The notes under the pieces were generated by a model. The model did not search any database. It saw only the letters and a list, made by a program, of their open reading frames with translations, and had not been told where the DNA came from. From Octopus sinensis (taxonomy: Eukaryota): a stretch of DNA of 64,000 nucleotides. Of the stretch, positions 1,835 through 60,114 are shown piece by piece. The stretch covers positions 82,088,001 through 82,152,000 of the forward strand of contig NC_043001.1 in the NCBI RefSeq assembly GCF_006345805.1. Reading direction: 5' to 3'. Position 1 is the stretch's first letter; each line of letters opens with the position of its first letter. A program made the translations under genes and the position numbers.

Positions 1835-1950
1835 TAAAAATTTATATATAAAGAACGTGAAAAACACGAAGGGACGAACACAGAAAACAGACAAGTCATT
1901 CGAAGCCTTCAATCTTCAGTCAGAAACCGAATCATCATGGCAAATTTCGG

Positions 1951-1951
<1 letters not shown>
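1832..1951. repeat. ~120 bp dispersed module embedded in (TA)n
   Basis: gaagggacgaacac...ttcgaagccttcaatcttcagtcaga.accgaatcatcat.gcaaatttcggct also occurs at 30911-31044 and 31645-31778. Confidence 0.9.
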
Positions 1952-1986
<35 letters not shown>

Positions 1987-2160
1987 TAAATATTAGGGAA
2001 TAAATCCAAATTTACAGGGAAAAAATCAGATTTAGGATTAAATCCAATTTTATAGTAAAATATTATAAAATATTATTAGAGACAAAACCACTATTTTGCA
2101 AAACAAACAAGGAAAGACTTAATCAATACATAAAATTTTAATAAATAGTCAAAAAAACCG

Positions 2161-2203
2161 CCACTACAATTGTTTCTTGTCTTGATCGACAATCTTCAGG
2201 TGG
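2161..2203 (-). ncRNA. Minimal type I hammerhead ribozyme
   Basis: Minus strand reads CCAC CTGAAGA TTGTC gatcaa GACAA GAAA C aatt G TA GTGG: full core, 5-bp stem II, 2-bp stem III with palindromic loop, GUA cleavage triplet, 4-bp stem I. Confidence 0.85.
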
Positions 2204-2627
2204 ACTTCCAATCTAAAATATCAATATTTTAAAATATAAAAATAATAATTTTAAAATAATTAAAGTATGAATGAAAAAATATAAAATATAATCCATATAT
2301 AACCTATATATAATCCATATATAATCAATATATAAACAATATATAAACTAAAATAAACCTATCAACAATTAAATATAAAATATAAAATATAAACAAAACA
2401 AAAAAATAATAATAATATAATAATAAATATATATACACCCATACACATATACCTAATTATATATAACCATATCTAACTACATACACTAAATCACACACCT
2501 ATATATATATCCCTATACATACACATAAAAACGTCTAGGCAACTATAAATAAATAAAATAGCTAAATACTTCAACACAATACTTATTCATACTCCCACAC
2601 ACACACACATTACAACCCACATTCACG

Positions 2628-4370
2628 CTCTAGAAACGGACATCACTTAAAATTATGAACGGAGAAATGGAATAAATGAATTAAAAATTATATTCACTGG
2701 TTTAAAACGAACACTACTTAAAAATTATGAATGAAACAATGCAATAAAACAACAGACATCGCAAATAGACACAAATTACTACGAATTCCTTAACAAACCT
2801 ACCATGATAAACCAAAACTCATAAAAACATATAATGATAAAATCTCCCTTACTAAACTCTATAACATACCTATATAGCAATCCCCCTAACCTAAACATTC
2901 ACACACAAATACACACACGTAAACCACACACCCACGACATATACAAATACCCACACCACTTACACATACCTATACATACATATAAACCTCAACATATACT
3001 CCAAAAACCCACCAACCCCCCAGACACATAAACACAAAAATTATGAATGGATTCTTTATATAAAACTCCATGATAAGCTTAAACTCACAAAACATAAATG
3101 ATAAAACCTCCCTTTACTAAACACTAAACATACTTATATAGCATCCCTTTAACCTATACATTCACACACAAATACACACACGTAAAACACACACCCATAA
3201 CAAATACAAACACCACACCCCACTCACACACACCCCAAGTACATATAAGCCTCAACATATCACCAAACAAAATTACTTTACCAAGGAACTAACATATGTA
3301 TAAAAAGTATAACCGCTCTGGAAACGAACATCTTTTAAAATAATGAATGGAGAAATGGAATAAATGGAATTAAAAATAATATTCACGTGGCAAAACGAAC
3401 ACCACTCAAAAAATTAGAATGAAACAATGTAATAAAACAACAACATCGAAAATAGACAAATTACCACGAATCCCTAAAAAAAACCATGATAAACCAAAAC
3501 TCTTAAAAAACATATAACGATAAAATCTCCCTTTGCTATACTCTATAAAAACCTATATAGCAATCCCCCTAACCTAAACATTCACACACAAATACACACA
3601 CGTAAACCACAGACCCACGACTTATACACATACTTATACTAACTTATAAACCTCAATATACACCAAAAACCCACTCCCTCCCCACACAGACAATTTACAA
3701 CTTTAGCACAGTAGCAAGCTGGCAGAATCGTTAGCATTCTGGACAAAGTGCTTGGGGACATTCTCTTGGCTCTTTACGTTCCGAGTTCAAATGCTGCCGA
3801 GATCAAGTTAACGTTCATTGTTTACCTAAATAACAAACCCATATACACATTCACACACAAACACACACACACGCAAAACACACACACACAACAGATACAT
3901 ATACTCCCTCACATATACGCATATACATACTCACTAAACTCGATATATACAACAATATTTACACACCCACACTCATACAGATAAATAAATATACAACTAA
4001 ACTCACAACACAATCTCATATACATAAACACTCCTATGAAAAACCACATTAAAACTACATCGTAATTAACCAGAATATCAAAAATAACAATATGACATAA
4101 GGAGAAATAAAATACATACTTACAAGTCAGTTTCAAATTATGAAGTGAAATTAAATCTTAGCCGTTAAAAAAATCAAACCAAAAGTACGTTACCTAGAAA
4201 TATAACTTATGTAAAAAAAAGAATACGCGCCATGGAAAGTAAACGTCATTTAAAATTATGAATGGAGAAGTAGAATAAATGGAACTAAAAACTATATCCA
4301 CGTGGCAAACCAACACTACTTAAAAAAAAATTTATTATGAATGGATTCTTTAAAATCTACCATGATAAAT
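2628..4370 (+). repeat. Hierarchical degenerate tandem repeat inside the left arm (mirrored at ~7570-9330)
   Basis: Unit heads ctct(a/g)gaaacg..cat..ttaaaat.atgaa.ggagaa at 2628, 3316 and ~4230; sub-unit ccatgataa... at ~2802, 3068, 3484, 4360; strongly A/C-rich on the + strand. Confidence 0.85.
3711..3812 (+). mobile_element. SINE family A head fragment within the left arm (mirror copy at 8136-8237, minus strand)
   Basis: gcaagctggcagaatcgttagca...tttacgttccgagttcaaatgctgccgagatc matches the 5' part of family A. Confidence 0.8.
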
Positions 4371-5105
4371 TATTATATACATTTATGAGCTTTAGCTCAT
4401 CTTAGCAGCTCTAACAAACAACTTGCAGTAACCCAAATCTATTCTCGATGCCTGCCTTACTACTACACTATTCCATTCCCAATTCCAAGCAACGCTAGTC
4501 CACCACCCGGTTACAATTCCAACTCCACCCATTCATTCACAATTCAACGACGTTCGCCTCCACAGCGCTACATATAAGCCTCAACATATACACGGAGATT
4601 CACTTTCACATCCGTGCGGATGGGTGAGAGTATACATTGAGTGTAGTGATGGGGCTCCCATTACTATACACATTTGTACCTGTGTGGTAGTCTCCATGTG
4701 TATATTCACCGCACGGGTATAAATGCAGGGGGTACACGCGCACGTCATGTGCGTGTACCCCCTCACATGTACATATGCATGCCTATTGGGCTCGATATGT
4801 GCAACAATGTAATCGCGCCCGCATACATGCATATGGGCGAGTTGCACAATCAAAATACGCACACGTGTGTGTGTGCGTTCCCTGGTTGTGCAATTCACCC
4901 ATCTGGGTGTGAGTGGGTGTAAGCGTATTGCTGTGGATGTCGAGCTTGATACGTATGTATATGAGTGTGTATTGGGGGGTTGTACGTATTTATTGTGTGC
5001 ATGTGCTTCACGCACGTGCGTCCATGTATGGATGAATATATTGGGATTGCTATGTGGGTGTAAATGGGTATGGAGGGGGGAGTTTTGTCATTGTATTGGT
5101 GTGGG

Positions 5106-6144
5106 ATAAAGATTTAATTGATAATTTTCGAGATACTTCTAATAATAATTATAAATTTGTTAGGTTTAGTGGTAAAAATAATAGATATTATAAAAAAATA
5201 ATAAAAATGATAAAATATAAAAATAATAATAATCATAATAAATAATAATAATAAATAAATAAGAATAATAAAATAAAAATAAATTTAATAATTATTATAA
5301 TAATTATATTGATAAAATTAATAATATAATAATTCCTTAAATGCTGTACATAGATATAATTCTGATAATAATTTTAATAAAATAAAGAATTATAAATATG
5401 TTTATAATAATGATAATAATAATAAGGTTAATAAGAATAAAATTTGGTTATAGTTCCTTATGGAGATCAAGTAAAAACGAATATTATTAAAGAGATTTTA
5501 GATGTTATAGAACTATTTATTAGAGATAATCGTAAATATAGAAACATTTTCTCTTTTAATAATTTTGGAGTTGGTTACTCTACCACTAATAATGTTGGTA
5601 ACATTATTTCTTCATTTAATAAATATAAACTGAATAATTTTTATAAAAAGAAATTATTTGATAATAATATTAATAATGATAAGACTTATATTAATTGTAC
5701 ATGTAGAGATAAATCTAATTGTATATTAAATAATAATTGTGATATAACGATGTAGTGTATAAATGTATAGTTACATTACATGATAATAACTTTAAGAATA
5801 ATAATTACCCAAAAGCGGTTTATATAGGTTCTACTTCCTCAAAAATAAAACTAAGAATCGCACAACATATGAATTCTTTTAAAATAAAAACTTAATCAAC
5901 TCAACCGGACTTAGTAAGTACATTTGGAGTCTTAAATCACTAAATATTAATTATAGTTTAATTTGGGAAATAATTTGTAAAACTAAATCATATACTATAG
6001 GAGCTAATTGTTGTTATTTATGCTCTAATGAGTTTAAAGAAATTTTATTTTAAGTATGATAAATTACTTAATACTGGTGAAGAGCGCAAAATAAAATGCA
6101 GACATAAGTTACTTTACCTATATAATAAGTTTCATGATAAATAG
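5106..6144 (+). pseudogene. Frameshifted PLE-type linker + GIY-YIG endonuclease reading frame with Asn-rich N-terminal part; no RT motifs seen
   Basis: Joined over 4 frameshifts: NKNKIW-VPYGDQVKTNIIKEIL...YSTTNNVGNIISSFNK...CTCRDKSNCILNNNC-DVVYKC...VYIGST (YIG at 5821-5829)...KLRIAQHMNSF...STGLSKYIWSLK...WEII...CCYLCSNE...LLNTGEERKIKCRHK; stop at 6142-6144. Matches the WxxPPYSxxVxTN / CxC..C..C / VY..YIG / LSxYIW / LC..E / LN...CRH pattern of PLE endonucleases. Confidence 0.88.
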
Positions 6145-6844
6145 CAATAATAGTTCCCTTTTAGGTTACTTTAGTTTAGTTTAAATTAGTTTAGATAATA
6201 TATTTTTTGGTTATGTAGTCTAGGCTTTAATTATAGTTAGTCTTTATTGATATTTCTTTGTTTTAATTAGTTCATTTTTAATGTATATTAATATAACAGT
6301 TTATGGTATGTTAAAACTTTAATAATTTATATTAGATTTTTTTATTTTCTTTATTTATATATTTTTTTTTTTTTTTATTTTTATTTTATTTTATTATGTA
6401 TTTTTATTATGCATTTGTTATATGTATTTTGGAGGATATATATATATTTATATGTTGATGGGTGTTATTTAGTGGTGTTTTTATTGAGTTTTGTATGTAT
6501 GTGTGAATGTTTACGATCCCTTTGTTTTTTGTTTTTTATTTGGTATGTTGAATTGACAGATTTTATTTGGGTATTGTCTGTTATAATAAAGTAAACACAC
6601 CCATAACAAATATAAGTGCCCACTTCATTCGCGCGTACCTGGAATTGCATGTGAGCCTCAACATATACACCAAACGGCCACTCCCGCCCCATACGGACAA
6701 ATAAACACATACATCCCCAAAAATGGGTTAATCCCACTCACACCAATCATATGTATACAATTATACACACTAGAATAATACATAACTAACCCAAATATAC
6801 AGAACATACCAAAAATCACCAACTAACCACCTTCACAAATGAAA

Positions 6845-9800
6845 CCCACACCAATACAATGAAAAACTCCCCCCTCCATACCCAATTTACACCCACATAG
6901 CAATCCCAATATATTCATCCATACATGGACGCACGTGCGTGAAGCACATGCACACAATAAATACGTACAACCCCCAATACACACTCATATACATACGTAT
7001 CAAGCTCGACATCCACAGCAATACGCTTACACCCACTCACACCCAGATGGGTGAATTGCACAACCAGGGAACGCACACACACACGTGTGCGTATTTTGAT
7101 TGTGCAACTCGCCCATATGCATGTATGCGGGCGCGATTACATTGTTGCACATATCGAGCCCAAAGCATGCATATGTACATGTGAGGGGGTACACGCACAT
7201 GACGTGCGCGTGTACCCCCTGCATTTATACCCGTGCGTGAATATACACATGGAGACTACCACACAGGTACAAATGTGTATAGTAATGGGAGCCCCATCAC
7301 TACACTCAATGTATACTCTCACCCATCCGCACGGATGTGAAAGTGAATCTCCGGTGTATATGTTGAGGCTTATATGTAGCGCTGTGGAGGCGAACGTCGT
7401 CGTGAAATTGTGAATGAATGGGTGGAGTTGGGAATTGTAACCGGGTGGTGGACTAGCGTTGCTTGGAATTGGGAATGGAATAGTGTAGTAGTAAGGCAGG
7501 CATCGAGAATAGATTTGGGTTACTGCAAGTTGTTGTTAGAGCTGCTAAGATGAGCTAAAGCTCATAAATGTATATAATAATTTATCATGGTAGTTTTTTA
7601 AAGAATCCATTCATAATAAATTTTTTTTAAGTAGTGTTGGTTTGCCACGTGGATATAGTTTTTAGTTCCATTTATTCTATTCTCCATTCATTAATTTTAA
7701 ATGACGTTTACTTTCCATGGCGCGTATTTTTTTTTACATAAGTTATATTTCTATGGTAACGTAATTTTGTTTGATTTTTTTAACGGCTAAGAATTTAATT
7801 TCACTTCATAATTTGAAACTGACTTGTAAGTATGTATTTTATTTCTCCTTATGTCATATTGTTATTTTTGATATTCTGGTTAATTACGATGTATTTAATG
7901 TTGTTTTTCATAGGAGTGTTTATGTATATGAGATTGTGTGTGAGTTTTTAGTTGTATAATTTATTTATCTGTATGAGTGTGGGTGTGTAAATATTGTTGT
8001 ATATATCGAGTTTAGTGAGTATGTATATGCGTATATGTGAGGGAGTATATGTATCTGTTGTGGTGTGTGTTTTGCTGTGTGTGTGTTTGTGTGTGAATGT
8101 GTATATGGTTTGTTATTTAGGTAAACAATGAACGGTAAACTTGATCTCGGCAGCATTTGAACTCGGAACGTAAAGAGCCAAGAGAAATGTCCCCAAGCAC
8201 TTTGTCCAGAATGCTAACGATTCTGCCAGCTTGCTACTGTGCTAAAGTGTAAATTTGTCTGTGTGGGGAGGGAGTGGGTTTTTGGTGTATATTGAGGTTT
8301 ATAAGTTAGTATAGGTATGTGTATAAGTCGTGGGTCTGTGGTTTACGTGTGTGTATTTGTGTGTGAATGTTTAGGTTAGGGGGATTGCTATATAGGTTTG
8401 TTATAGAGTTTAGCAAAGGGAGATTTTATCGTTATATGTTTTTAAGAGTTTTGGTTTATCATGGTTTTTTTAGGGAATTCGTGGTAATTTGTCTATTTTC
8501 GATGTTGGTTGTTTTATTACATTGTTTCATTCATAATTTTGAGTGGTGTTCGTTTTGCCACGTGAATATTATTTTTAATTCCATTTATTCCATTTCTCCA
8601 TTCATTATTTTAAGATGTTCGTTTCCAGAGCGGTTATACTTTTTATACATATGTTAAGTTCCTTGGTAAAGTAATTTTGTTTGGTGTATATGTTGAGGCT
8701 TATATGTACTTGTGGGTGTGTGTGAGTGGGGTGGGTTTTGTATTTGTTATGGGTGTGTGGTTACGTGTGTGTATTTGTGTGTGAATGTATAGGTTAAAGG
8801 GATTGCTATATAAGTATGTTATAGTGTTTAGTAAAGGGAGGTTTTATCATTTATGTTTTGTGAGTTTTAGCTTATCATGGTAGTTTTATAAAGAATCCAT
8901 TCATAATTTTGTGTTTATGTGTCTGTGTGGGGTTGAGTGGGTTTTTGGAGTATATGTTGAGGTTTATATGTATGTATAGGTATGTGTAAGTGGTGTGGGT
9001 ATTTGTATATGTCGTGGGTGTGTGGTTTACGTGTGTGTATTTGTGTGTGAATGTTTAGGTTAGGGGGATTGCTATATAGGTATGTTATAGAGTTTAGTAA
9101 AGGGAGATTTTATCATTATATGTTTTTATGAGTTTTGGTTTATCATGGTAGGTTTAAGGAATTCGTAGTAATTTGTGTCTATTTGCGATGTCTGTTGTTT
9201 TATTGCATTGTTTCATTCATAATTTTTAAGTAGTGTTCGTTTTACCAAGTGAATATAATTTTTAATTCCATTTATTCCATTTCTCCGTTCATAATTTTAA
9301 GTGATGTCCGTTTTCTAGAGCGTGAATGTGGGTTGTATGTGTGTGTGTGTGGGAGTATGAATAAGTATTGTGTTGAAGTATTTAGCTATTTTATTTATTT
9401 ATAGTTGCCTAGACGTTTTTATGTGTATGTATAGGGATATATATATAGGTGTGTGATTTAGTGTATGTAGTTAGATATGGTTATATATAATTAGGTATAT
9501 GTATGGGTGTATATATAGTTTATTATTATATTATTATTATTTTTTGTTTTGTTTTATAGTTTATATTTTATATTTAATTGTTGATAGGTTTATTTTAGTT
9601 TATATACTGTTTATATATTGATTATATATGGATTATATATAGGTTATATATGGATTATATATTTATATTTTTTCATTCATACTTTAATTATTTTAAAATT
9701 ATTATTTTTTATTTTTTAAATATTGATATTTTAGATTGGAAGTCCACCTGAAGATTGTCGATCAAGACAAGAAACAATTGTAGTGGCGGTTTTTTTGACT

Positions 9801-9880
9801 ATTTATTAAAATTTGATTGTATTGATTAAGTTTTTCCTGTTTGTTTTGCAAAATAGTGGTTTTGTCTCTAATAATTTTTA
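6845..9880 (+). repeat. Right arm of the large inverted repeat
   Basis: Reverse complement of 2065-5105; G/T-rich on + from ~7350 to 9720. Confidence 0.95.
9744..9786 (+). ncRNA. Minimal type I hammerhead ribozyme
   Basis: CCAC 9744-47, CTGAAGA 9748-54, TTGTC/GACAA stem II, GAAA 9771-74, C-aatt-G, TA 9781-82, GTGG 9783-86; predicted cleavage after A9782. Confidence 0.85.
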
Positions 9881-9954
9881 TATATATATAATATATATAT
9901 ATTATTATTTAGCAGAAGCAACCGAGTAATTCAACATCAAAGAGTTTCGTCCGT

Positions 9955-10350
9955 TGGCACTTTGATAAACGTTAGCACGCCGGGCGAAATGAGTAGCCGT
10001 ATTTCGTCTGTCTCTACGTTCTGAGTTCAAATTCCGCCGAGGTCGACTTTGCCTTTCATCCTTTCGGGGTCGATTAAATAAGTACCAGTTACGCACCGGG
10101 GTCGATATAATCGACTTAATCCGTTTGTCTGTCCTTGTTCGTCCCCTCTGTGTTTAGCCCCTTGTGTTTAGTAAAGAAATAAGTATTTCGTATGTCTTTA
10201 CCTTCTGTGTTCAAATTCCGCCGAGGTCGACTTTGCCTTTCATCCTTTCGGGGTCGATGAGTTAAGTACCAGTTGTGTACTGGGGTCGATCTATTCGACT
10301 GCCTCCCTCCCCAAAAATTTCGGGCCTTGTGCCTAGAGTAGAAAAGTATG
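9955..10350 (+). mobile_element. SINE family A (tRNA-derived head + conserved central domain), head plus second body
   Basis: gttagcacgccgggcgaaatg...gagttcaaattccgccgaggtcgactttgcctttcatcctttcggggtcgat.aaataagtaccag; B-box-like gagttcaaatt; many copies in the window. Confidence 0.9.
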
Positions 10351-11789: not shown

Positions 11790-12635
11790 AACTGATATTG
11801 TATTCTAATTTTGGCAGAAAACCAGCAAGTTCATGAGAAGGAACAAATCGATTACGATGACCCCAGTGCAAAATTGGTACTTATCTTATCAATCCTGAAA
11901 GGGATGAAAATCAAAGTCGACCTCGGCAGAATTTGAACCCAAAACGTAAAGACGGAAGAAATACCTATTTCTTTACTACCCACAAGGGGCTAAACACAGA
12001 GAGGACAAACAAGGACAGACAAACAGATTAAGTCGATCATATCGACCCCAGTGCGTAACTGGTACTTATTTAATCGATCCCGAAAGGATGAAAGGCAAAG
12101 TCGACCTCGGCGGAATTTGAACTCAGAACGTAGCGGCAGACTAAATACGGCTACGCATTTCGCCTGGTATGCTAACGATTCTGCCAGCTCACCGCCCTCA
12201 GTACAGTTAGTTATTGGTTTCAAACATTGGCACAAGTTCAGCAATTTCGGGAGAGGGTGTAAGTCGATAACATCAACCCCAGTGCTAAACCAGTACTTAC
12301 TTCATCGACCCCAAAAGTGATGAAAAGCAAAGACCGCCTCGGCGGAATTTGAATTCAGAACGTAAAAACGGACGAAATGCATTTTTTCCGGAGTGCTAAC
12401 GATTCTTATTTCTTTATTGCCCACAAGAAGCTAAATATAGAGGGGTAAACAAGGACAGATAAAGGGATTAAGTCGATTACGTCGACATCAGTGCGTAACT
12501 GGTACTTAATTTATCGACCCCGAAAGGATGAAAGGCAAAGTCGACCTCGGCGGAATTTGAACTCAGAACGTAACGGCAGACGAAATGCCGGTAGGCATTT
12601 CGCCCGGCGTGCTAACGAATTTGCCAGCTTGCTGC
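11790..12635 (-). mobile_element. Tandem cluster of four family A SINE bodies
   Basis: Repeated gtcgacctcggc(a/g)gaatttgaa motif at ~11915, 12100, 12330, 12540. Confidence 0.9.
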
Positions 12636-13092
12636 CTTCAGTACGGCAACTAATATTTCCATCAAGAAAGTGTGATAATACACTAAACAAGCAATTATCA
12701 TCGCTCATGTTTATTTAGCGATGAAATCTATCAAAGAGATAAGTTCATTTGATTTTGTTAATGATTTTACAATGAGTTTAGCAAAATACTCTTAACTTTA
12801 CAGCTTACTTTAGACAGCTTCTTCGCGAAGATTATGGTAATTGCCATTGTCATTAATCAAAAGTAATAAGTCTCTAAACAAATAATTACCGTTTCTCATT
12901 GTTAAATGTTATCTGCTAAAAATTGAAAAGACGGTGCCGTTCTGCGTTACTGTTTCCTTCCTCTGCCATTCATTTCCATTTTTATGGCTTTCTTTTATCC
13001 TCGTTCCCGACTTGAACGCTAACTCCTTCCTCTTTCTAACTTCGTGATAAATTGGTAGATAGCCAAATTAAAGTTTATATGTAGTTAAATGT

Positions 13093-13402
13093 GGAGGCGC
13101 AATGGCCCAGTGGTTAGGGCAGCGGATTCGCGGTCGTAGGATCGCAGTTTCGATTCCCAGACCGGGCGTTGTGAGTGTTTATTGAGCGAAAACACCTTAA
13201 AGCTCCATGAGGCTCCGGCAGGGTGTGGTGGCGATCCCTTCTGTACTCTTTCGCCACAACTTTCTCTCACTCTTTCTTCTGTTAGCCTGCTCGCTTAGCC
13301 AGCGGGGTGGCGTCATTGAAGGCTGAAACAATGCGAAGCGTATTGTGACCAGCGATGTGTTGCAACATCTGATAGCCTGGTCGGTCACGTATCACGGTGA
13401 TG
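13093..13402 (+). mobile_element. SINE family C (tRNA-like head), short-tail variant
   Basis: ggaggcgcaatggcccagtggttagggcagcgg...gtttcgattcccagaccggg (A/B-box-like); tail also found inverted at 28078-28167. Confidence 0.85.
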
Positions 13403-13429
13403 TAGTAAAATATTCATGCTTGTACAAGA

Positions 13430-13870
13430 AGAAAGATAACTCAATATTTCGTCACAAGGCCGGCAATTTCAAGAGAAGGAATAAATCGATTACATTGACC
13501 CCAGTAATAGACCAGTGCTTCTTTTATTGACCCCGAAAGGGATGAAAGGCAAAGTGGACCTCGGCGGCATTTGAACTCAGAACGCAAAAACGGACGAAAT
13601 GCCTCTAGGCATTTTGCCCGGCGTGCTAACCATTCATATTTCTTTATTGCCCACAGGGGGCTAAATATAGAGGGGACAAACAAGAACAGACAAAGGTATT
13701 AAGTCGATTACATCGACCCCAGTGCATAACCGGTACTTAATTTATCGACCCCGAAAGGATGAAAGGCAAAGTCGACCTCGGCGGAATTTGAACTCAGAAC
13801 GTAAAGACAGACGAAATACCGCTAAGCATTTCGCCTGGCGTGCTAACCATTCTGTCAGCTCGCTGCCTTA
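13430..13870 (-). mobile_element. Two family A SINE copies in tandem
   Basis: Central motif at ~13530-13590 and ~13745-13800. Confidence 0.9.
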
Positions 13871-15764: not shown

Positions 15765-16129
15765 ATATATTATATATATGTGTGTGGTGTGTGTGTGTGT
15801 GTGGTGTAGGTGTGTATATGGGTATGTATGCACACACGAACACACGCATATATATATATATAATATAAGCTGTAGTAAATTTAGAAACAAAAACAAGATT
15901 TTGTATGTAAGTACGTAAGTATGTGTTTGAAATATTTTCATGTGTACAAGTCCCTCGTGGTTAACGAGCTATCCCCGTGCACCTGTTCCTATATAAGGAA
16001 GGAATAAAATGCAATTTCATCTCAGCATGTATGTTAGTGTGTATGAGTGTGTGTGTACATTGGTGTGTATAGAGTTGTATTGCTGCGTATAAGACAAAAG
16101 CTGGAACGAAGCAGCGTCAACAGTAACAT

Positions 16130-16240
16130 TGACAACGTCATCTACAACCACGACAACATCATCTACAACTACGACAAGATCATCATCATCATCATCATCA
16201 TCTTCATCATCATCATCATCATCATCATCATCGTCATTAT

Positions 16241-16271
<31 letters not shown>

Positions 16272-17840
16272 AGCAGCACCGTCATCATCATCTTCATCAT
16301 CGTTATCATCGGCAATACCATCTTTATTATCAACGGCATTATGATCATAATCTTCATCATTATTACCATCATCACCATCCCCATAATCACCATCATCACC
16401 GTCATCCCAATCATCATCATCATCATCATCATCATTCATCACCCCACCACCACCACCACCACCCCTCCACCACCTCCTCCTCCTCCTCCTCCTCATCCTC
16501 ATCATCATCATCATCACCACCAACAACAACACTACCACCACCACCACCATCCTCCTCCTCCTCCTCCTCACCATCATCATCGACATCAAAATCATAACCA
16601 TTATCAAACAAACAAGATTATCAACATGAGCAAAATCGTCGTGAATATCATCAAGGTATCATCATCATCATCATCATCATCAACAACAACAACTACAACA
16701 ACAACAACAACAACAACAACACCAACAACAATAATTGTTGCTACAGCCACAATTCTAACTTCAATAACAACAACAATAACAACTATGACCAAGACCGCTC
16801 AACCTGCTAGAAACAACTGTCAAAACTGCCTCGAACTCTTTCCCATCGTTTTTGTACACAATACCCGAAAATATTAGGCGGTGTGGTCATTGGTGGAATT
16901 CTTTTGGTCATAAGTCTGTGAGATTAGGACAAAGCAACAACAGCAACAATAATAGTCACAAGACCATAATGATAGCAACAACAGCAGCAGCAGCAACTGT
17001 AGCTGCAGGAACGACAGCAGCAGCAATAGCATCAGAAAGAACAGCAGCAGCAACAGCAGTAGCAGCGATAACAACAACAATAACAACAACGACAGCAAGC
17101 ACAGCAGCCGGCATCAACAACAGCAGCAACAAGAGCAGTAGTCGGCAGCAACAACAGCAGCAAGTAACAACAACAGCAGCCGGCAATAACAACCGCAGCA
17201 GCAGCCGGCAACAACAACAAAAATAACAGCAGCAACAACAACAGCGGCCGGCAACAACAGCAGCAGCAGCCAGCAACAACAGCAGCAGCCGGCAAGAAGA
17301 ACAGCAGTAACAATAACAGCAGCCGGCAACAACTGCAACAGCAGCAGCGGCCAGCATCAACAACAGCGGCAGCAGCAGCCAGCAGCAACAACAACAACAG
17401 CAGCAGCAACAACAGCAGCAGCCGGCAATAAGAACAGCAGTAACAGCAACAGCGGCCGGCAACAACAACAGCAGCAGCAACAGCAGCAGCAACAACAACA
17501 ACAGCCTGCAACAACAGCATCACCCGGCAGCAACAACAGCAGCAACAGCAGCCGGCAACAACAACAGCAGCAGCATGACATCCACAGCAACAAGAACAGC
17601 AGTATCAAAAACACTTGAAGTAACGGCTACAGCAGCAGCGGCAGCAGCAGCAGCAGCAGAAAAAGGCAGCCACAGCAACGATAATAACAACAATAACAGC
17701 AGCGGCGATAGCAGCAGCGACTGTAGCAGCAACAGCAGCAGCAGAAGCAACAACAGAAATAACAGCAACAACAGCAGCAGCAACAGTATCATCAGTAGCA
17801 GCAGCAACAACAGCAGCGGTAGCAGCAACAGCAGCAGAGG
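16130..17840. repeat. Compound trinucleotide microsatellite (CAT/CAC/CCT, then CAA/CAG)
   Basis: Directly visible; explains all poly-amino-acid ORFs here. Confidence 0.97.
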
Positions 17841-21300: not shown

Positions 21301-21729
21301 AAATATTGCGACGGACAGCCTTGGTACGTGCATTTTATACTGTTGTTGTGGCTGCCAAATTGGTTGTTTATTATGCTATATTTTCCTATTGAAGTGATAT
21401 ATTTCTGTTTCTGTTATGCTTGTGTGTTCATTAATATGTTTTTTGTTTACAATATGTTTTCTTTTGTTTAGTAGTTGTTTTGCATTGTTTACTATAATCT
21501 GAGAGACGGATCCGAAGAAAGAGAAGGCCAATTCTACATTAGCATTACACTGTTGATTAAAATGAATATATTAACAAAATAACCGACTTTTTTTGGAAGG
21601 ACTACTCTTACTAGTGAAGACATTACAGAAGATTTATCAAGCATCCCTGTGTGAAATAAAATCGAAATTGAAAATTACTTTTTCCTGTTATACATGTAAA
21701 GCATCAAGCAGACCTGGAGTAAGATTTTA

Positions 21730-22082
21730 TTCACGCATTGCAAAATGTAAACGGAACAACTACGATGAATTGAAGTGGGAAATACGCAAGTTTTGGGCAA
21801 TGAAGAGAGTGGACGTGATACCAATAGTGATTTTTCCGCCTAGAAGTATCAACACTCAACTACCAACACGACTCAAAAAGATTGGTACAAATGTAAAGAT
21901 AGAACAGCGACAAAAAAAGTCAGCATTGCTTGGAACTGCAAGAGTTCTCCACAGGGTTCTTGAAGCATGATCAGTAAATAAATGCCACCTTAGTCTGCTG
22001 GCTGTGGGCAGCTGACATTTTCCATTCATATACAGCAAAATAAGCTGAGAGTTTTCATCAATAATAATAACAACAACAGCAA

Positions 22083-28021: not shown

Positions 28022-28163
28022 CCTCTGCCTGTTTTTGAATCTCCCCCCCTCTCTCTCTCTATATATATATATATCACGCGATATTGCTACACATCGCTGG
28101 TCACAATGCGCTTCTCATTGTTTTAGCCTTCAATGACACCGCCTCGCTGGCTAAGCGAACAGG

Positions 28164-28209
<46 letters not shown>

Positions 28210-28764
28210 ACAGGTTGAACTTTCGCCGTATAGATCTCGTATGCCACAGTTTGATGAATCTTCTTCTTCTTCTTCTTCTTTTCCTTCTTCTTCTCTTCTT
28301 CTTCTTTCTTCTTCTCTTCTTCTTCTTCTTTCTTTTCTTCTCTTCTTTCTTCTTGCTTTCTTCTCTTCTTTTCTTCTTCTTCTTCTTCTTCTTCTTCCTC
28401 TTCTCTTCTTTCTTTCTTCTTCTTCTCTTTCTTCTTCTTCTTCTTCTTCTTCTTCTCTTCTTCTTCTTCTTCTTCTTCTTCTTCTTCTTCTTCTTCTTCT
28501 TCTTCTCTTCTCCTTCTCTTATAGTTAGCAACATCATTTCGTCATTTTTCTTCTTTTGCCATCCAACGTTCGCGATATGAATCTTTTTGATGAATCATCC
28601 AGATTTTCCTTGTAATAGCTATACCGTCGATGTTATCAGTAATATTGGCGTCAAACACTCCACCTTATATACTAATGTCTAAAATTTGCGTTGACACACT
28701 ACATCTTCTGGTTATTTTATGCTTCCCTGGTTTTGTCTTACTGATTAGATTCTGATAGCATCTC

Positions 28765-30910: not shown

Positions 30911-31778
30911 ATATAAGAATGAATGTTTTTATATATAATGAACGTGAAATACAGGAAGGGACGAACACGGAACACAGACAAATCATTCGAAGCCTTCAAT
31001 CTTCAGTCAGACACCGAATCATCATAGCAAATTTCGGCTGTTCAATTCTGATATTTGCTCCAACTCGGCCAGCCCCAAGAAAAAAAAAAAAAAAAAAAAC
31101 TAAGCTGTAAGCATTAGATTTCTTGGTAGAAGACAGGAATGTGAACGCATAAGCCGGATGTGAATACAAGAGACGAAAACGAAATTGAAAACAGTAATGA
31201 ATAAACAAAATATATAACGGTGGTTGTCATACGACTTTAGACCAAATGAGACAAAAACAACAACAACAACATAGCTGCGTAGAAATAATTACCGTTCGGT
31301 AGCGGGGACACATGTTGGTCGAGATACGAAGCCCAACAGAATGGTTTTAAGAAGCAGCAGGTCGCAGGAGAGAGAGAAAGAGAGACAGAGAGAGAGGGAA
31401 TCAAAGAGGGTGGAAGCAGGGGACAGAATCAGTGACCAAGAGAAAAGGAGAAAGAAGGGATTAAGGAGGATGGAAGGAAGAGGGGAGGAGGATGGGAGGA
31501 AGAGAGGGGAAGAAACGGAGGGCGCCAAAATGTTTGGTGAAGAAGCAATGGCGGGTAGGAAAGACAGTGTGTATAGAAGTCGTGCAGGGTTTAAAATTGG
31601 ACAAACAAACGTGGGGGGGGGGGGGTGCACGTAACGCCGCAATAATATAAGAATGAATGTTTTTATATATAATGAACGTGAAATACAGGAAGGGACGAAC
31701 ACGGAACACAGACAAATCATTCGAAGCCTTCAATCTTCAGTCAGACACCGAATCATCATAGCAAATTTCGGCTGTTCA
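30911..31778. repeat. Two apparently identical 134-bp direct repeats (30911-31044, 31645-31778) flanking ~600 bp
   Basis: No difference found when compared by eye. Confidence 0.92.
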
Positions 31779-32114
31779 TATATATGTATGTATGTGTGTG
31801 TATATGTTTGTGTGTCTGTATTTGTCCCTCTAGCATTGTTTGACAACCGATGCTGGTGTGTTTACGTCCCCGTCACTTAGCGGTTCGGCAAAAGAGACCG
31901 ATATAATAAGTACTGGGCTTACAAAGAATAAGTCCCGGGGTCGATTTGCTCGACTAAAGGCGGTGCTTCAGCATGGCCGCAGTCAAATGACTGAAACAAG
32001 TAAAAGAGAGTAAGGCTGTCTATATATAGCCCTATATATGCAGTGGTATTGCTTATAAGACGTAACAGGACATATGTGAATTCTATATACGTTGGTAAGT
32101 GATTTAGCACTAAA

Positions 32115-34965: not shown

Positions 34966-35024
34966 TTACCGTATTGGTCCCAATTTCAGAGTTAATTCAT
35001 AAGAATTCTCCTCCTCAGCGATAA
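34966..35024 (-). ncRNA. Type I hammerhead ribozyme
   Basis: Minus strand: TTATCG CTGAGGA GGAG AATTC ttat GAATT aa CTCT GAAA TTGG ga CCAA TA CGGTAA; 6-bp stem I, extended stem II, 5-bp stem III, AUA triplet; predicted cleavage after 34972. Confidence 0.88.
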
Positions 35025-35191
35025 ATACGTAAGACATAAATGAAATACTCAACTTTTCCTTTTGCCCTTATTTTATAAGTTATTTATAAATTTTCTATTC
35101 TGGATATATTTGGGGTACTTAGGTCTGCTCGGGACTTAGTGCTTGCTTTTTCAATGAGTATGAGTAAGTATTTCATTTATGTCTGACGTAT

Positions 35192-35245
35192 TTATCGCTG
35201 AGGAGGAGAAAATTCTGATGAATTTACTCTGAAATTGGGACCAAT
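35192..35245 (+). ncRNA. Inverted second HHR copy, truncated at the predicted cleavage site
   Basis: TTATCG CTGAGGA GGAG...CTCT GAAA TTGG ga CCAA T, then unrelated sequence; H17 and the 3' strand of stem I are missing. Confidence 0.8.
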
Positions 35246-45615: not shown

Positions 45616-45710
45616 AACTGCTACTACTAATGGTGGTGGTGGTGGTAGTACTACAACTATTACTATTGCTGTTGCTGCTGCTGTTTCTACTACTACTACT
45701 ACTGCTGCTG

Positions 45711-45760
<50 letters not shown>

Positions 45761-45779
45761 GCTGCTGCTGCAGTTGCTG

Positions 45780-45811
<32 letters not shown>

Positions 45812-45830
45812 GATGCTGCTACTGATGCTG

Positions 45831-45879
<49 letters not shown>

Positions 45880-45887
45880 AGTTGCTG

Positions 45888-45925
<38 letters not shown>

Positions 45926-46090
45926 GCTGCTGCAGTTGCTGCTACTACTACTACTATACTACTACTACTACTACTACTACTGGTGGTGGTAGTACTACAA
46001 CAACTACTATTACAATATGGGGCTGATAGGGGGTGTGATGGTGGTTGTGCTGCTGCTGCTGCTACTACTACTGCTACTACTACATAGTTA
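45380..46090. repeat. (CTA/CTG/GGT)n compound microsatellite
   Basis: Directly visible. Confidence 0.97.
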
Positions 46091-57869: not shown

Positions 57870-58235
57870 TGTATGTATGTATGTATGTATGTACCAAATC
57901 CACTCACAAGGCTTTGATCAGCCCGGGGCTATAGTAGAAGGCACTTGAGCAAGGTGTCACGCAGTGGGACTGAACCCGAAACCATGTGGCTGGTAAGCAT
58001 ACTAGAAATTCTGCTAGGTCGTCGCATTAATTGTAGAATTAATAATCCTTTCTATTATTGGCACGAGTCCTGGAATTCAGAAGATGTGACCTGTGGATTA
58101 CATCGACCCCTGTGCTCAATTCGTACTTATTTTATCGACACCCACGAGGATGAAAGCCGAAATCGTACACATCGGAATTTGAACTCAGAACGTAAAGCAT
58201 TTTACCCGGCATGATAACGATTCTGCAAGCTCGCC
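57185..58235 (-). mobile_element. Nested cluster of SINEs A, B and D fragments
   Basis: A at 57185-57372 and 58030-58235; B at 57378-57675 and 57890-57996; D-type head at 57675-57790. Confidence 0.8.
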
Positions 58236-58249
58236 ATTTTGATTGTAAC

Positions 58250-58283
58250 ATTAACAATAGTATTAGTAACAGCAACAGCAATT

Positions 58284-58323
<40 letters not shown>

Positions 58324-58377
58324 CAGCAGTAGTAGTAGTAGTAGCAGTATCAGCAGTAGTAGTAGTAGCAGTATCAG

Positions 58378-58422
<45 letters not shown>

Positions 58423-59674
58423 TAGTAGTAGAAGCAGCAGCAGTAGTAGTAGTAGTAGTAGTAGCAGCAGCAGCAGCAGTAGTATTAGTATTAGTAGTCG
58501 CAGCAACAATAGTAGTATTAGTAGTAAGAGTAGCTGTGGTGGTGGTACTGGTGGTGGTAGTTGTCGTTGTTGTATAAGCGTTGTTGGTGTTGATTTTTGT
58601 TGGTAGTGAGGGTAGTAGTAGTAGGAGGAGGAAGAGGAGGAGGAGGAGGAGGAGGAGGAAGAGGAGGTGGAGGAGAAGGACGACGACGTGTAACTGCAGC
58701 AGCAGAAGGAGCAGCAGCAGTGGTAATAAAAGTAGATGTGGTGATAGTAATGGTGATGGTAACAGTAACAGCATTTGTAGCAGCAGCAGCAGCAACAGTA
58801 GAAGTAGTAGTATTGGTGGTAGGGCTGGCGTTATTATTATTATTATTATTATTATTAGTAGTAGTAGTAGTAGTAGTATTGGTGGTGGTGCTGGTTTTAG
58901 TAGTAGTAGTAGTAGTAGTGGTGGGGCTGATATTAGTAATAGTAGTAGTAGTAGTATTGGTGGTGGTGGTTGTGGTTGTGGTGGTAGTGGTAGCAGCTGT
59001 AGTATTTATTGTTCTGGTGTTTATTCAATATTTCCAAATTCCCTTTTCATATTTTACAAAGATAACGAAAAATGTTTTCTTTACAATGAGAATTTTTATT
59101 TTATTTTCATATCATTTTGCTCCTTTTTATTTATTTTTTTGATATTTTACATTTTTTATTTTAATCTTTGTCTTTTTAACTCACTCATCACAATGTTCTT
59201 AGCAAATTAATATTTATAGTGAAAAAATTGCATCCGGTACTGAAAAGATGACGTCAACAAAGAATATGGCCGTCTTATCGATGATGATTATGATGATGAT
59301 GATGGTAGTGGTGACGATAATGATGATGGTGCTGATGGTGATGATGTGAAGGTGATGGTAGCAGTGATGGTGGTGTTGATGATAGTAGTGGTGGTATTGA
59401 TAATGTTGGTGATGTTGATGGCAGTATTAATACTAGTAGACGATGACAATGGTGATGATGATGACGACGACGACGTTGTTGTTGTTGTTGTTGTTGTTGT
59501 TGGTGGTGGTTAAGGTCGTGGCGATGGTGATGGTAGTGGTGATAGTGTTGGGGTTCATGATGGTAGTGGTAGTAATGATATTGTTGATAGCAAAGGCAAT
59601 GATGATGATGATGATGATGACGACGACAACGACGACGACGATGATGATGGTGATGCCGATGATGGAGACAGTGG

Positions 59675-59716
<42 letters not shown>

Positions 59717-59800
59717 CGACAACGACAACGACGACGACGATGATGATGTTGATGCCGATGATGGAGACAGTGGTGATGATGATGATGATGATGATGATAA
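58250..59800. repeat. Compound trinucleotide microsatellites (TAG/CAG/GAG/GGT 58250-59000; GAT/GAC 59270-59800)
   Basis: Directly visible; ~97-bp higher-order duplication near 59618/59715. Confidence 0.95.
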
Positions 59801-60114
59801 AAACGAAGTTTAACACTGGCACAAATCTAATACAGTTTAATAGACAGTTTAATCGTTATATCGAACCCAGTATTAAACTGTTTATTTTACCGATACCAGG
59901 AAAAAAAAAGGCATAAAGGAGAGGAAGGCGGAAAAGGGAGGCAGAATTGACCTCCTTTAGATCTGAACGCTGTACGTATAAAGGAGTGAAACTGTAAATA
60001 CGATAAATCCGATTTTTATGTTTTTCAACAGTTCAGGAAACTCAAAACTATTGTTCATCGTCACTTGTAGAACAGGAGAGAATTACCATATATATCTATA
60101 TACACACACACACA

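What the first reader, a model, noticed from the sequence alone, without database searches (positions are those of the whole stretch)
1981..9880. 7.9-kb fold-back element: ribozyme-capped 3-kb inverted arms around an RT-less Penelope-type GIY-YIG nuclease
Seen: arms ~2065-5105 and 6845-9880 are reverse complements, each has a complete HHR ~100 bp from its outer end, the 1.7-kb spacer holds a PLE linker + GIY-YIG frame, and the unit is bounded by (TA)n. Established: Penelope-like retroelements carry GIY-YIG endonucleases, have HHRs in their pseudo-LTRs, and can form inverted 5' duplications. Unusual here: arms of kilobase length built from their own tandem repeats, and no RT. Inference: a non-autonomous endonuclease-only PLE lineage, or a TIR-like element built from PLE parts, whose transcript would be cut by the ribozyme and fold into a ~3-kb dsRNA hairpin with the nuclease frame in the loop.
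Basis: partly seen in the sequence, partly recalled or inferred. Interest (0 to 1): 0.92.

Follow-up and report, generated by a model that had tools for sequence, protein, structure and literature searches.

The report
Head-to-head truncated Penelope-like retroelement copies
The 7.9-kb fold-back is real, but it is best read as two 5'-truncated copies of one octopus Penelope-like retrotransposon (Hydra clade) inserted head-to-head in a (TA)n microsatellite, a layout already described for these elements, not an RT-less nuclease lineage.

Summary
Every sequence observation holds. The arms 2060-5105 and 6845-9887 are reverse complements (96.8% identity). Each has a complete type-I hammerhead motif 101 nt from its outer end. 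The 1.74-kb spacer carries a Cys-linker plus GIY-YIG frame, and (TA)n flanks both sides.

The frame is the C-terminal ~340 codons of a ~700-760-aa RT-EN protein. It has 2,567 relatives, and a full-length relative folds like telomerase RT. Its motifs (CxCX5C linker, no CCHH, CxxC and CxH, (TA)n target) match the published Hydra clade of Penelope-like elements (PLEs). The frame starts exactly where the left arm ends, so the RT is missing through 5' truncation. A diverged Octopus vulgaris copy reaches further into the RT and shares the terminal ~80 nt next to (TA)n.

The unit is therefore an inverted 5'-truncated copy abutting a longer 5'-truncated copy, which is a documented PLE arrangement. Two things are unusual: the 3.7-kb 3' region, which contains ~675-bp repeats and a SINE fragment, and the apparent youth of the copy. 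Each strand carries only one sense ribozyme, and the long hairpin would sequester it. Copy number and read support could not be tested.

The parts
1952..1993 (.). (TA)n microsatellite, left half of the insertion target
   Evidence: TRF period 2, 21.5 copies; sequence read
1994..2059 (-). About 65-nt extension ('tail') present only at the outer end of the left (inverted) copy; contains a 21-nt motif x3
   Evidence: The arm alignment ends at about 2060 while (TA)n ends at 1993; TRF 1995-2052. An optional one-sided tail is a described PLE signature (PMC8557442, PMC11167929); the assignment here is inference
2060..5105 (-). Left arm: inverted, more severely 5'-truncated copy (3' region only; equivalent to 6845-9887)
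   Evidence: 96.8% identity to the reverse complement of 6845-9887; the terminal ~80 nt are shared with the independent O. vulgaris copy L001 (z=5.9)
2161..2203 (-). Type-I hammerhead motif of the left copy
   Evidence: Descriptor match; identical to the right copy
5106..6144 (+). 5'-truncated RT-EN ORF remnant: post-palm RT C-terminal region, low-complexity N/K-rich stretch, CxCX5C linker (about 5696-5740), GIY-YIG core (VVY 5752-5760, YIG 5821-5829, R 5854, H 5866), CxxC (6012-6023), E 6030, N 6070, CxH (6097-6105), stop 6142-6144. 1-nt indels at about 5450, 5750, 5889 and 6050
   Evidence: Three-frame translation; 2,567 relatives, best E 8e-23; alignments A1 and A3; the ~265 codons from 5334 carry no substitution-type stop (P about 1.6e-13); the upstream stretch 5106-5333 is a TAA-rich tract with in-frame TAA codons
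6145..6844 (+). ORF-proximal 3' UTR unique to the longer copy: AT-rich 6145-6590, then CA-rich 6595-6844 holding an old inverted fragment of the arm repeat unit (6595-6709)
6845..9887 (+). Right arm: distal 3' region of the longer, direct copy. GC-rich hairpin segment 6845-7560; ~675-bp repeat units (8247-8632 / 8911-9322 and partial copies); SINE fragment 8128-8235; AT-rich PLE terminus 9322-9887
9744..9786 (+). Type-I hammerhead motif in the sense orientation of the ORF; predicted cleavage between A9782 and G9783, 105 nt from the element's 3' end
   Evidence: Descriptor match, 0/300 simulations; hand-mapped core C3-A9, G12-A14, A15.1-U16.1, H17=A; helix III of 2 bp with an AAUU loop fits the metazoan type-I description in PMC4209133
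9879..9902 (.). (TA)n-like tract, right half of the insertion target
   Evidence: Sequence read
3693..3800 (.). Fragment of the tRNA-derived SINE inside the left arm (mirror of 8128-8235); full SINE copies lie at 9967-10300 and 11899-13847
   Evidence: BLAST 8128-8235 vs 12528-12633 and 13759-13864; inverted pairs I1, I4, I8

Best explanation
The unit 1994-9887 is one insertion of a Hydra-clade Penelope-like retroelement (PLE) into a (TA)n microsatellite of an octopus-type genome. It consists of two 5'-truncated copies joined head-to-head. The direct copy (5106-9887, + sense) keeps the last third of the RT-EN ORF plus a 3.7-kb 3' region. The inverted copy (2060-5105, with a ~65-nt tail at 1994-2059) keeps only the distal 3.04 kb of that 3' region. 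Both 3' ends, each with a hammerhead motif ~100 nt inside, face outward into the microsatellite. Shown: the geometry, the homology of the frame to RT-EN proteins, the clade-diagnostic motifs, the shared terminus with an independent copy, and the absence of RT by truncation. Inferred: the two copies arose in one retrotransposition event by target-primed reverse transcription from both nicked strands of the target. The one-sided tail would then reflect alternative RT start sites. The insertion looks young, roughly 4 My if the published O. vulgaris TE clock applies. The 2.7-kb CA/TG-rich block with a SINE fragment was already part of the template RNA's 3' region. The locus is a dead copy: it cannot move by itself, and its nuclease frame is broken as assembled. 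If read through it would form a long RNA hairpin, but the ribozymes would not 'cap' that hairpin.
For: Geometry. Frame homology: 2,567 relatives, and full-length ones (about 700-760 aa) match at their extreme C-terminus; alignments A1 and A6 show invariant FDIxxFYPSI and YRDDG upstream. The AlphaFold model of the full-length relative P0030 (pLDDT 87) hits telomerase RT structures first (E 8e-8 to 1e-6), then R2, LINE-1 and retron RTs. Clade motifs as listed by Craig et al. 2021 (PMC8557442): CxCX5C = CTCRDKSNC; no CCHH; CYLC...E...N...CRH; (TA)n target; DKT and RW[KR] in the relatives. GIY-YIG: the Y/YIG/R/H/E/N pattern; Pfam GIY-YIG is the top recurring family among relatives (8 of 32, best E 2e-4); the EN model (pLDDT 88) has beta-beta-alpha-alpha-beta-alpha order; the weak viral fold hits that carry names are GIY-YIG proteins. 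Truncation point: the frame is traceable to 5106, exactly at the arm boundary. Independent copy: L001 (O. vulgaris OX597831.1) is 78% identical over 5173-6075, extends into RT motifs, and has the same terminal ~80 nt in inverted orientation next to a long (TA)n. Literature: an inverted 5'-truncated copy adjacent to the unit is typical of PLEs (PMC8557442, Fig. 2 text); a PLE protein cleaves and extends both DNA strands in vitro, and tails arise from two RT start sites (PMC11167929); opposite-strand hammerhead pairs are reported (PMC4209133). Youth: no substitution stop in ~265 codons at 81% A+T; arm divergence 2.8%; clock from PMC13282606.
Against: Hydra-clade elements are described as short (<3 kb), whereas this copy has 3.7 kb downstream of the stop codon, largely non-PLE-looking repeats plus a SINE fragment. 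No second locus with the same arm sequence could be found or searched for. In L001 only the ORF and the terminal segment align significantly, so its 'same architecture' is suggestive only. The hammerhead segment is not conserved in L001, no Rfam model recognises it, and position 10.1-11.1 is U-A rather than the usual G-C. The arm differences show 21 transitions against 65 transversions, which is odd for real mutation. There is no microhomology or other junction signature at 5105/5106. Raw reads were not available.
Confidence: 0.66

Rival explanations
1. A single 5'-truncated PLE copy (5106-9887) inserted normally. Later, a replication or repair accident (fold-back or template-switch inverted duplication) copied its distal 3 kb to the left side.
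For: The arms are much more alike (97%) than the two family copies are to each other (78%). Identity is highest next to the centre (99-100% at 4290-5039), as in palindromes shaped by DNA-level processes. The direct copy already contains an older inverted repeat-unit fragment at 6595-6709, so the region is prone to inversion-duplication.
Against: The left arm ends at the element's own 3' terminus next to (TA)n, not inside flanking DNA, and no right-flank sequence beyond (TA)n is duplicated. The left end carries a private ~65-nt tail. The inner end of the arm coincides exactly with the 5' truncation point of the ORF copy. A random duplication would need all three coincidences.
Confidence: 0.15
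2. A single TPRT event followed by snap-back self-priming of the first-strand cDNA: its 3' end folded back onto itself near position 6845 and copied the distal part, giving arm-loop-arm in one step.
For: This produces exactly the observed order, rc(9887..6845) followed by 5106..9887, from one cDNA (geometric inference). The spacer would be the loop.
Against: There is no complementarity between the sequence at 5106 onward and that just left of 6845 (ATAAAG vs the TTTCAT needed). The left outer end has a tail absent from the right end, whereas snap-back copying should reproduce the right end and run on into the primer DNA.
Confidence: 0.08
3. One reading: a recurrent, non-autonomous fold-back element (long arms made of repeats, EN-only ORF in the loop) that is mobilised as a unit, or whose stand-alone GIY-YIG nuclease is expressed.
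For: Long arms containing tandem repeats resemble Foldback-type elements. The frame has no substitution stops. The only close relative came from a Nanopore-based assembly; if the window's source assembly, which is unknown, was also Nanopore-based, its four 1-nt indels in A/T runs could be assembly errors.
Against: The frame has no start of its own and begins in mid-RT at the arm junction. Relatives always place this domain at the C-terminus of an RT. No other copy of the arm sequence was seen in the remaining 56 kb of the window or in 45 kb of L001, and arm ORFs have no relatives in the protein collection. The arrangement is fully explained by known PLE behaviour.
Confidence: 0.05
4. An assembly artefact (chimeric fold-back long read).
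For: PLE tandem/inverted structures are noted to cause assembly problems (PMC8557442). The platform of the window's assembly is unknown. The transversion excess among arm differences is unusual.
Against: Fold-back read chimeras give near-perfect palindromes with no unique spacer. Here there is a 1.74-kb unique centre, 86 substitutions, 49 indels, a private tail at one end, and unrelated flanks on the two sides.
Confidence: 0.04

Closest known systems
Hydra clade of C-terminal-EN Penelope-like elements (Craig, Yushenova, Rodriguez, Arkhipova 2021, PMC8557442)
   Same: CxCX5C linker; no CCHH motif in the GIY-YIG core; CxxC and CxH around the conserved E and N; insertion into (TA)n; a hammerhead motif in the terminal region; relatives with DKT and RW[KR] motifs and a telomerase-like RT; aquatic invertebrate host (Mollusca are listed for the clade).
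   Different: This copy lacks the RT through 5' truncation. Its 3' region is 3.7 kb against whole elements of <3 kb, and carries ~675-bp repeats and a SINE fragment. The family is extremely AT-rich (about 19% GC in the coding part).
Canonical PLE insertion architecture: pseudo-LTRs with an adjacent inverted 5'-truncated copy (Penelope/Poseidon, Neptune, Naiad; PMC8557442 Fig. 2; PMC11167929)
   Same: An inverted 5'-truncated copy abuts the 5' end of a longer copy. 3' ends face outward. A tail is present at one end only. The target is a microsatellite. There is a hammerhead in each terminal repeat.
   Different: No direct pLTR or partial tandem copy is present. The longer copy is itself truncated, so no complete ORF exists. 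The arms are unusually long (3 kb).
Metazoan type-I hammerhead ribozymes of PLEs and retrozymes (Cervera & de la Pena 2014, PMC4209133; bioRxiv 10.64898/2026.07.22.740005)
   Same: Complete catalytic core; helix II of 5 bp; helix III of 2 bp capped by a 4-nt palindromic loop (AAUU); located in the PLE terminal repeat; opposite-strand pairs are reported.
   Different: U10.1-A11.1 instead of the usual G-C. Helix I has only 4 contiguous pairs. No Rfam model scores it. It is not tandem (retrozymes are direct tandem arrays), so no second sense copy is nearby for dimer formation.
Foldback (FB)-type transposons with long repeat-built inverted termini
   Same: Kilobase-scale inverted arms that contain internal tandem repeats around a central segment.
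   Different: The termini here are PLE 3' ends, and the centre is a truncated retroelement ORF. There is no transposase and no evidence of recurrence. The resemblance is geometric only.

Membership tests
Penelope-like elements (PLE) | Reverse transcriptase of the telomerase-related type in the same ORF | tested here: not met
   Absent from this copy: the frame starts after the RT palm, at the arm boundary 5106. It is present in the family. L001 extends into the post-YxDD RT region. Full-length relatives have FDIxxFYPSI and YRDDG, and the P0030 model hits TERT structures first (E 8e-8). The copy is a truncated member, not an RT-less lineage.
Penelope-like elements (PLE) | GIY-YIG endonuclease domain | tested here: inconclusive
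   The motif pattern Y...YIG...R...H...E...N is present. Pfam GIY-YIG is sub-threshold but is the top recurring family in relatives (8 of 32, best E 2.2e-4). The model has the canonical beta-beta-alpha-alpha-beta-alpha order. Foldseek finds no PDB hit and only weak hits to viral GIY-YIG proteins (E 0.02-0.1). The window frame itself gets no Pfam hit.
Penelope-like elements (PLE) | Terminal repeats (pLTRs), direct or inverted, formed by partial copies; frequent 5' truncation | tested here: met
   Inverted 3.04-kb partial copy abutting a 4.78-kb 5'-truncated copy.
Penelope-like elements (PLE) | Hammerhead ribozyme motif in the terminal repeat | tested here: inconclusive
   The structural descriptor is met, with 0/300 chance matches. 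Rfam hammerhead models are silent. The motif has decayed in the only independent copy. Cleavage was not tested.
Hydra clade of PLEs | Linker CxCX5C instead of CX2-5CxxC | tested here: met
   CTCRDKSNC at about 5696-5722. C5, C7 and C13 are nearly invariant in 32 relatives.
Hydra clade of PLEs | No CCHH motif inside the GIY-YIG core; CxxC and CxH flanking the conserved E and N | tested here: met
   The core VVYKCIVTLHD...YIGST has one Cys, and the relatives' consensus has none. CYLC (6012-6023), E, N and CRH (6097-6105) are present. C114, C117, E120 and C143 are invariant and N134 and H145 nearly invariant.
Hydra clade of PLEs | Insertion into (TA)n | tested here: met
   (TA)n on both sides of the window unit and at the L001 terminus.
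Hydra clade of PLEs | DKT (for DKG) and RWK motifs in the N-terminal/RT part | tested here: met
   Met in full-length relatives only: ADKT and RxRW[KR] in the A1/A6 consensus. That part is missing from the window copy.
Hydra clade of PLEs | Short element (<3 kb) | tested here: not met
   The truncated direct copy alone is 4.78 kb, with 3.7 kb after the stop codon.
Foldback / TIR DNA transposons | Recurrent copies with the same inverted termini, target-site duplication, and a transposase (in autonomous members) | not testable with these tools
   No eukaryotic genome search was available. There is no other arm copy in the window or L001. No transposase-like ORF is present. A TSD is undeterminable in (TA)n.
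Non-LTR retrozymes | Direct tandem repeats, each with a sense hammerhead | tested here: not met
   There are only two motifs, on opposite strands and 7.5 kb apart. The ~675-bp arm repeats carry none.

The most novel reading that the evidence does not exclude
The long-armed arm-EN-arm unit is not a one-off. It would be a recurrent PLE derivative whose 3-kb 3' region (repeats plus a SINE fragment) travels with an active, very AT-rich octopus Hydra-clade family. Such head-to-head insertions would then act as hairpin-RNA loci feeding small-RNA or ADAR pathways in cephalopods. A related reading is that the four 1-nt indels are assembly errors and a stand-alone EN fragment is expressed.
Probability: 0.07. 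Interest if true: 0.6.

Novelty: new member of a known kind. Interest (0 to 1): 0.27.

Why it matters
This is mainly a result for annotation. It shows that a striking 'ribozyme-capped fold-back with an orphan nuclease' resolves into the documented head-to-head insertion pattern of Penelope-like elements. It also gives motif-level criteria (CxCX5C, CxxC, CxH, no CCHH, (TA)n) that place an octopus family in the little-studied Hydra clade.

Two points may interest TE specialists. First, the stop-free frame and the 97%-identical arms suggest this clade was active in an octopus lineage within the last few million years. Second, the template carried an unusually long, repeat-laden 3' region.

Long near-perfect inverted repeats like this one are also candidate sources of dsRNA in animals known for heavy RNA editing, but nothing here shows that this locus is transcribed.

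Tried and rejected
- Rfam at gathering and permissive thresholds found no hammerhead family. The mir-like hits are simple-repeat or local-hairpin matches far below gathering scores.
- MFE folding of the ribozyme region does not recover the hammerhead fold and has z about 0. This is expected for a minimal helix III and was not used as evidence either way.
- Pfam and PDB sequence searches with the stitched frame gave nothing. The profile of 32 relatives against the PDB also gave nothing.
- The word-indexed protein search failed three times to return close octopus relatives, so copy number and recurrence of the arms could not be assessed.
- Foldseek of the EN model against the PDB found no significant match.
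- The metagenome scan for the ribozyme core plus helix II gave two hits, both in coding-like context without helices I or III. I rejected them as chance.
- I tried to show that L001's inverted segment equals a short ancestral UTR. Only the terminal segment aligns above composition-matched noise (z 5.9, all others |z|<1.5).
- The left-flank ~125-bp repeat (1836-1960) was examined as a possible second ribozyme element. It has CTGAAGA but no complete core.
- A bacterial promoter/terminator scan was run once and is irrelevant for a eukaryotic locus.

Full report
**Observation**

The window holds a large inverted repeat. Positions 2060-5105 and 6845-9887 are reverse complements at 96.8% identity over 3,082 alignment columns. 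A global alignment gives 86 substitutions (2.8%) and 49 indel events. Identity is 99-100% near the centre (4290-5039) and lower toward the AT-rich outer ends. The 1,739-bp centre (5106-6844) is about 19% GC. (TA)n tracts lie at 1952-1993 and about 9879-9902.

**Ribozyme**

Reading the right arm on the + strand gives CCAC-CUGAAGA-UUGUC-GAUCAA-GACAA-GAAA-C-AAUU-G-UA|GUGG (9744-9786). The identical sequence lies on the - strand of the left arm (2161-2203). All core positions are canonical: C3-A9, G12-A14, A15.1-U16.1 and H17=A. Helix II has 5 bp, helix I has 4 contiguous bp, and helix III has 2 bp capped by the palindromic loop AAUU.

A descriptor requiring the core plus all three helices matched three times in the 64-kb window. 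Two of those are the arm copies and one is an unrelated site. It matched 0 times in 300 composition-matched simulations and 0 times in 45 kb of octopus DNA, L001. A short helix III with a 2-4-nt palindromic loop is the published description of metazoan type-I hammerheads. Those are thought to act as dimers and cleave poorly as monomers (PMC4209133).

Caveats:
- No Rfam hammerhead model scores the site at any threshold.
- The MFE fold is uninformative.
- Positions 10.1-11.1 are U-A.
- The two copies are one observation, and the segment has decayed in the only independent family copy.

I accept it as a complete hammerhead motif whose activity is untested.

**Nuclease frame**

The + strand of the spacer carries a frame that can be followed through four single-base indels, at about 5450, 5750, 5889 and 6050, to a stop at 6142-6144. 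Word-indexed searches and Pfam/PDB sequence searches found nothing. A full HMMER scan of 1.8 billion representatives found 2,567 relatives, with best E 8e-23 at 35-45% identity.

In the full-length relatives (about 700-760 aa) the match always lies at the extreme C-terminus. Upstream they share invariant FDIxxFYPSI and GLYRDDG motifs. An AlphaFold model of one of them (P0030, pLDDT 87) hits telomerase reverse transcriptases first (E 8e-8 to 1e-6), followed by R2, LINE-1, retron and group II RTs. These are therefore RT plus C-terminal EN proteins with a telomerase-like RT, which is the hallmark of Penelope-like elements.

The GIY-YIG assignment rests on several lines:
- the Y/YIG/R/H/E/N pattern;
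- recurrent sub-threshold Pfam GIY-YIG hits in relatives (8 of 32, best E 2.2e-4);
- a confident EN model (pLDDT 88) with beta-beta-alpha-alpha-beta-alpha order;
- weak Foldseek hits to viral GIY-YIG proteins.

The PDB fold search was negative.

**Clade**

Craig et al. 2021 (PMC8557442) define the 'Hydra' clade of C-terminal-EN PLEs by the following features:
- a CxCX5C linker;
- absence of the CCHH motif;
- DKT in place of DKG, and an RWK motif;
- canonical hammerheads;
- near-universal insertion into (TA)n;
- short length (<3 kb);
- aquatic invertebrate hosts, including Mollusca.

The window frame shows CTCRDKSNC, a single Cys in the core, CYLC...E...N...CRH and (TA)n flanks. The relatives show ADKT and RxRW[KR]. 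Every testable clade feature except 'short' is met.

**Why there is no RT**

The frame does not begin in the spacer. It can be traced in broken form back to position 5106, where ...DLIDNF... aligns with ...DLESF... of a related copy. That is exactly where the left arm ends.

The closest relative, P0146, is an Octopus vulgaris gene-model fragment (CAI9735836.1). Its locus, L001 (OX597831.1), contains a copy 78% identical to window 5173-6075. That copy continues 5' into RT sequence...NYLDVNFNL...PYHK.N...NHPPSIKK.... L001 also has the same terminal ~80 nt (...TGTTTG.TTTGC..AATAG..GTTTTGTCTCTAAT) in inverted orientation next to a long (TA)n, about 1 kb to the left of the ORF copy (z=5.9).

The EN is therefore fused to an RT elsewhere, both in distant and in close relatives. 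The window copy is simply 5'-truncated.

**Model**

The unit is an inverted, strongly 5'-truncated copy (2060-5105) joined head-to-head to a longer 5'-truncated copy (5106-9887). Both 3' ends point outward into the split (TA)n. [quoted passage not shown]

A purified PLE protein cleaves and extends both target strands and starts reverse transcription at two internal sites, which explains the tails (PMC11167929). Here a ~65-nt extension (1994-2059) is present only at the left end.

I infer two TPRT reactions in one insertion event. Three facts favour this over a later DNA-level duplication:
- the arms stop at the element terminus rather than in flanking DNA;
- the inner arm end coincides with the ORF truncation point;
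- the tail is one-sided.

The lack of junction complementarity and the one-sided tail also argue against snap-back self-priming. Neither alternative is excluded.

**Age and state**

Between 5334 and 6144 the stitched frame (about 265 codons) has no substitution-type stop, although about 10% of random codons at this composition are stops (P about 1.6e-13). The upstream stretch 5106-5333 is a TAA-rich low-complexity tract that does contain in-frame TAA codons. L001, by contrast, has several substitution stops.

The coding sequence therefore left a functional source recently. The published O. vulgaris TE clock is JC 0.09 for about 25 My (PMC13282606). With it, the 2.8% arm divergence corresponds to roughly 4 My. 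This is a rough inference, and gene conversion or assembly error would change it. All four frame breaks are 1-nt indels in A/T runs. Their density matches the indel density between the arms, and some could be long-read assembly errors.

**What is unusual**

The direct copy has 3.7 kb after its stop codon. Its layout is:
- an AT-rich proximal UTR (6145-6590);
- a CA-rich stretch with an old inverted repeat-unit fragment (6595-6709);
- a GC-rich segment with two very stable local hairpins (7047-7116 and 7179-7224; z -6.0 and -4.3);
- about 2.3 copies of a ~675-bp unit at 80-88% identity;
- a fragment of the local tRNA-derived SINE (8128-8235);
- the AT-rich PLE terminus.

Under the preferred model this block belonged to the template RNA. 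Whether it is a family feature or a peculiarity of one source copy could not be tested, because no tool here searches eukaryotic genomes.

**The proposed function**

The two ribozymes are on opposite strands. A + strand transcript has only the right one in sense, 105 nt from the end. A - strand transcript has only the left one. There is no second sense copy for dimer formation, and in a fold-back transcript the ribozyme would be paired with its antisense partner. A 3-kb hairpin RNA would form on read-through, as for any inverted repeat, and transcription is untested. The nuclease frame has no start codon of its own and is frameshifted as assembled.

**Verdict**

This is a new member (an octopus family, apparently recently active) of a known kind of element in a known kind of arrangement, with an unusually long 3' region. 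Interest is modest.

Noticed in passing
window 34966-35024 (-): Third match to the type-I hammerhead descriptor (UUAUCG-CUGAGGA-GGAG...CUCU-GAAA-UUGG.GA.CCAA-UA|CGGUAA) with a more stable helix III. It lies inside a long hairpin-like region (34984-35233). The Rfam hammerhead models are silent and the MFE z-score is -2.1. Probably a chance match in a palindromic repeat.
   Followed up: partly
window 1836-1960; also 30915-31040 and 31660-31790: A ~125-bp repeat (~90% identity among three copies). The copy next to the element is flanked by (TA)n on both sides. It contains CTGAAGA on the minus strand with some similarity to the arm ribozyme region, but no complete core. It may be a short fragment of another (TA)n-targeting element.
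   Followed up: partly
window 7047-7116 and 7179-7224 (mirrors at 4833-4902 and 4723-4768): Two very stable local hairpins inside each arm (dG -42.5 and -33.9 kcal/mol; z -6.0 and -4.3). The first has an AC-rich apical stem (ACGCACACACACACGUGUGCGU). A PLE was reported to start reverse transcription in an AC-rich stem-loop (PMC11167929), but these hairpins lie 2.7 kb from the 3' end.
   Followed up: partly
window 9967-10300, 11899-12180, 12448-12617, 13523-13847: Several copies, in both orientations, of a tRNA-derived SINE typical of octopus genomes lie immediately right of the element. A fragment of the same SINE sits inside both arms.
   Followed up: partly
window 2060-5105 vs 6845-9887: Differences between the arms show 21 transitions against 65 transversions and 49 indel events. 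That spectrum is unusual for point mutation and may reflect low-complexity misalignment, slippage or long-read assembly error.
   Followed up: no
L001 21390-22400: A non-LTR (LINE-type) RT fragment directly follows the 3' region of the O. vulgaris PLE copy and may have removed its right terminus.
   Followed up: no
window 21593-21970 (+): An ORF whose C-terminal sequence (...VIPIVIFPP...LKKIG...ALLGTARVLHRVLEA) looks to me like the tail of invertebrate non-LTR retrotransposon ORF2 proteins. It is unrelated to the finding.
   Followed up: no
window 16000-17500, 28150-28580, 45630-45990, 58130-59900: Long low-complexity trinucleotide-type tracts give spurious ORFs of 120-276 aa on both strands. 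The window is dominated by microsatellites and repeats, and no convincing host gene was seen.
   Followed up: no
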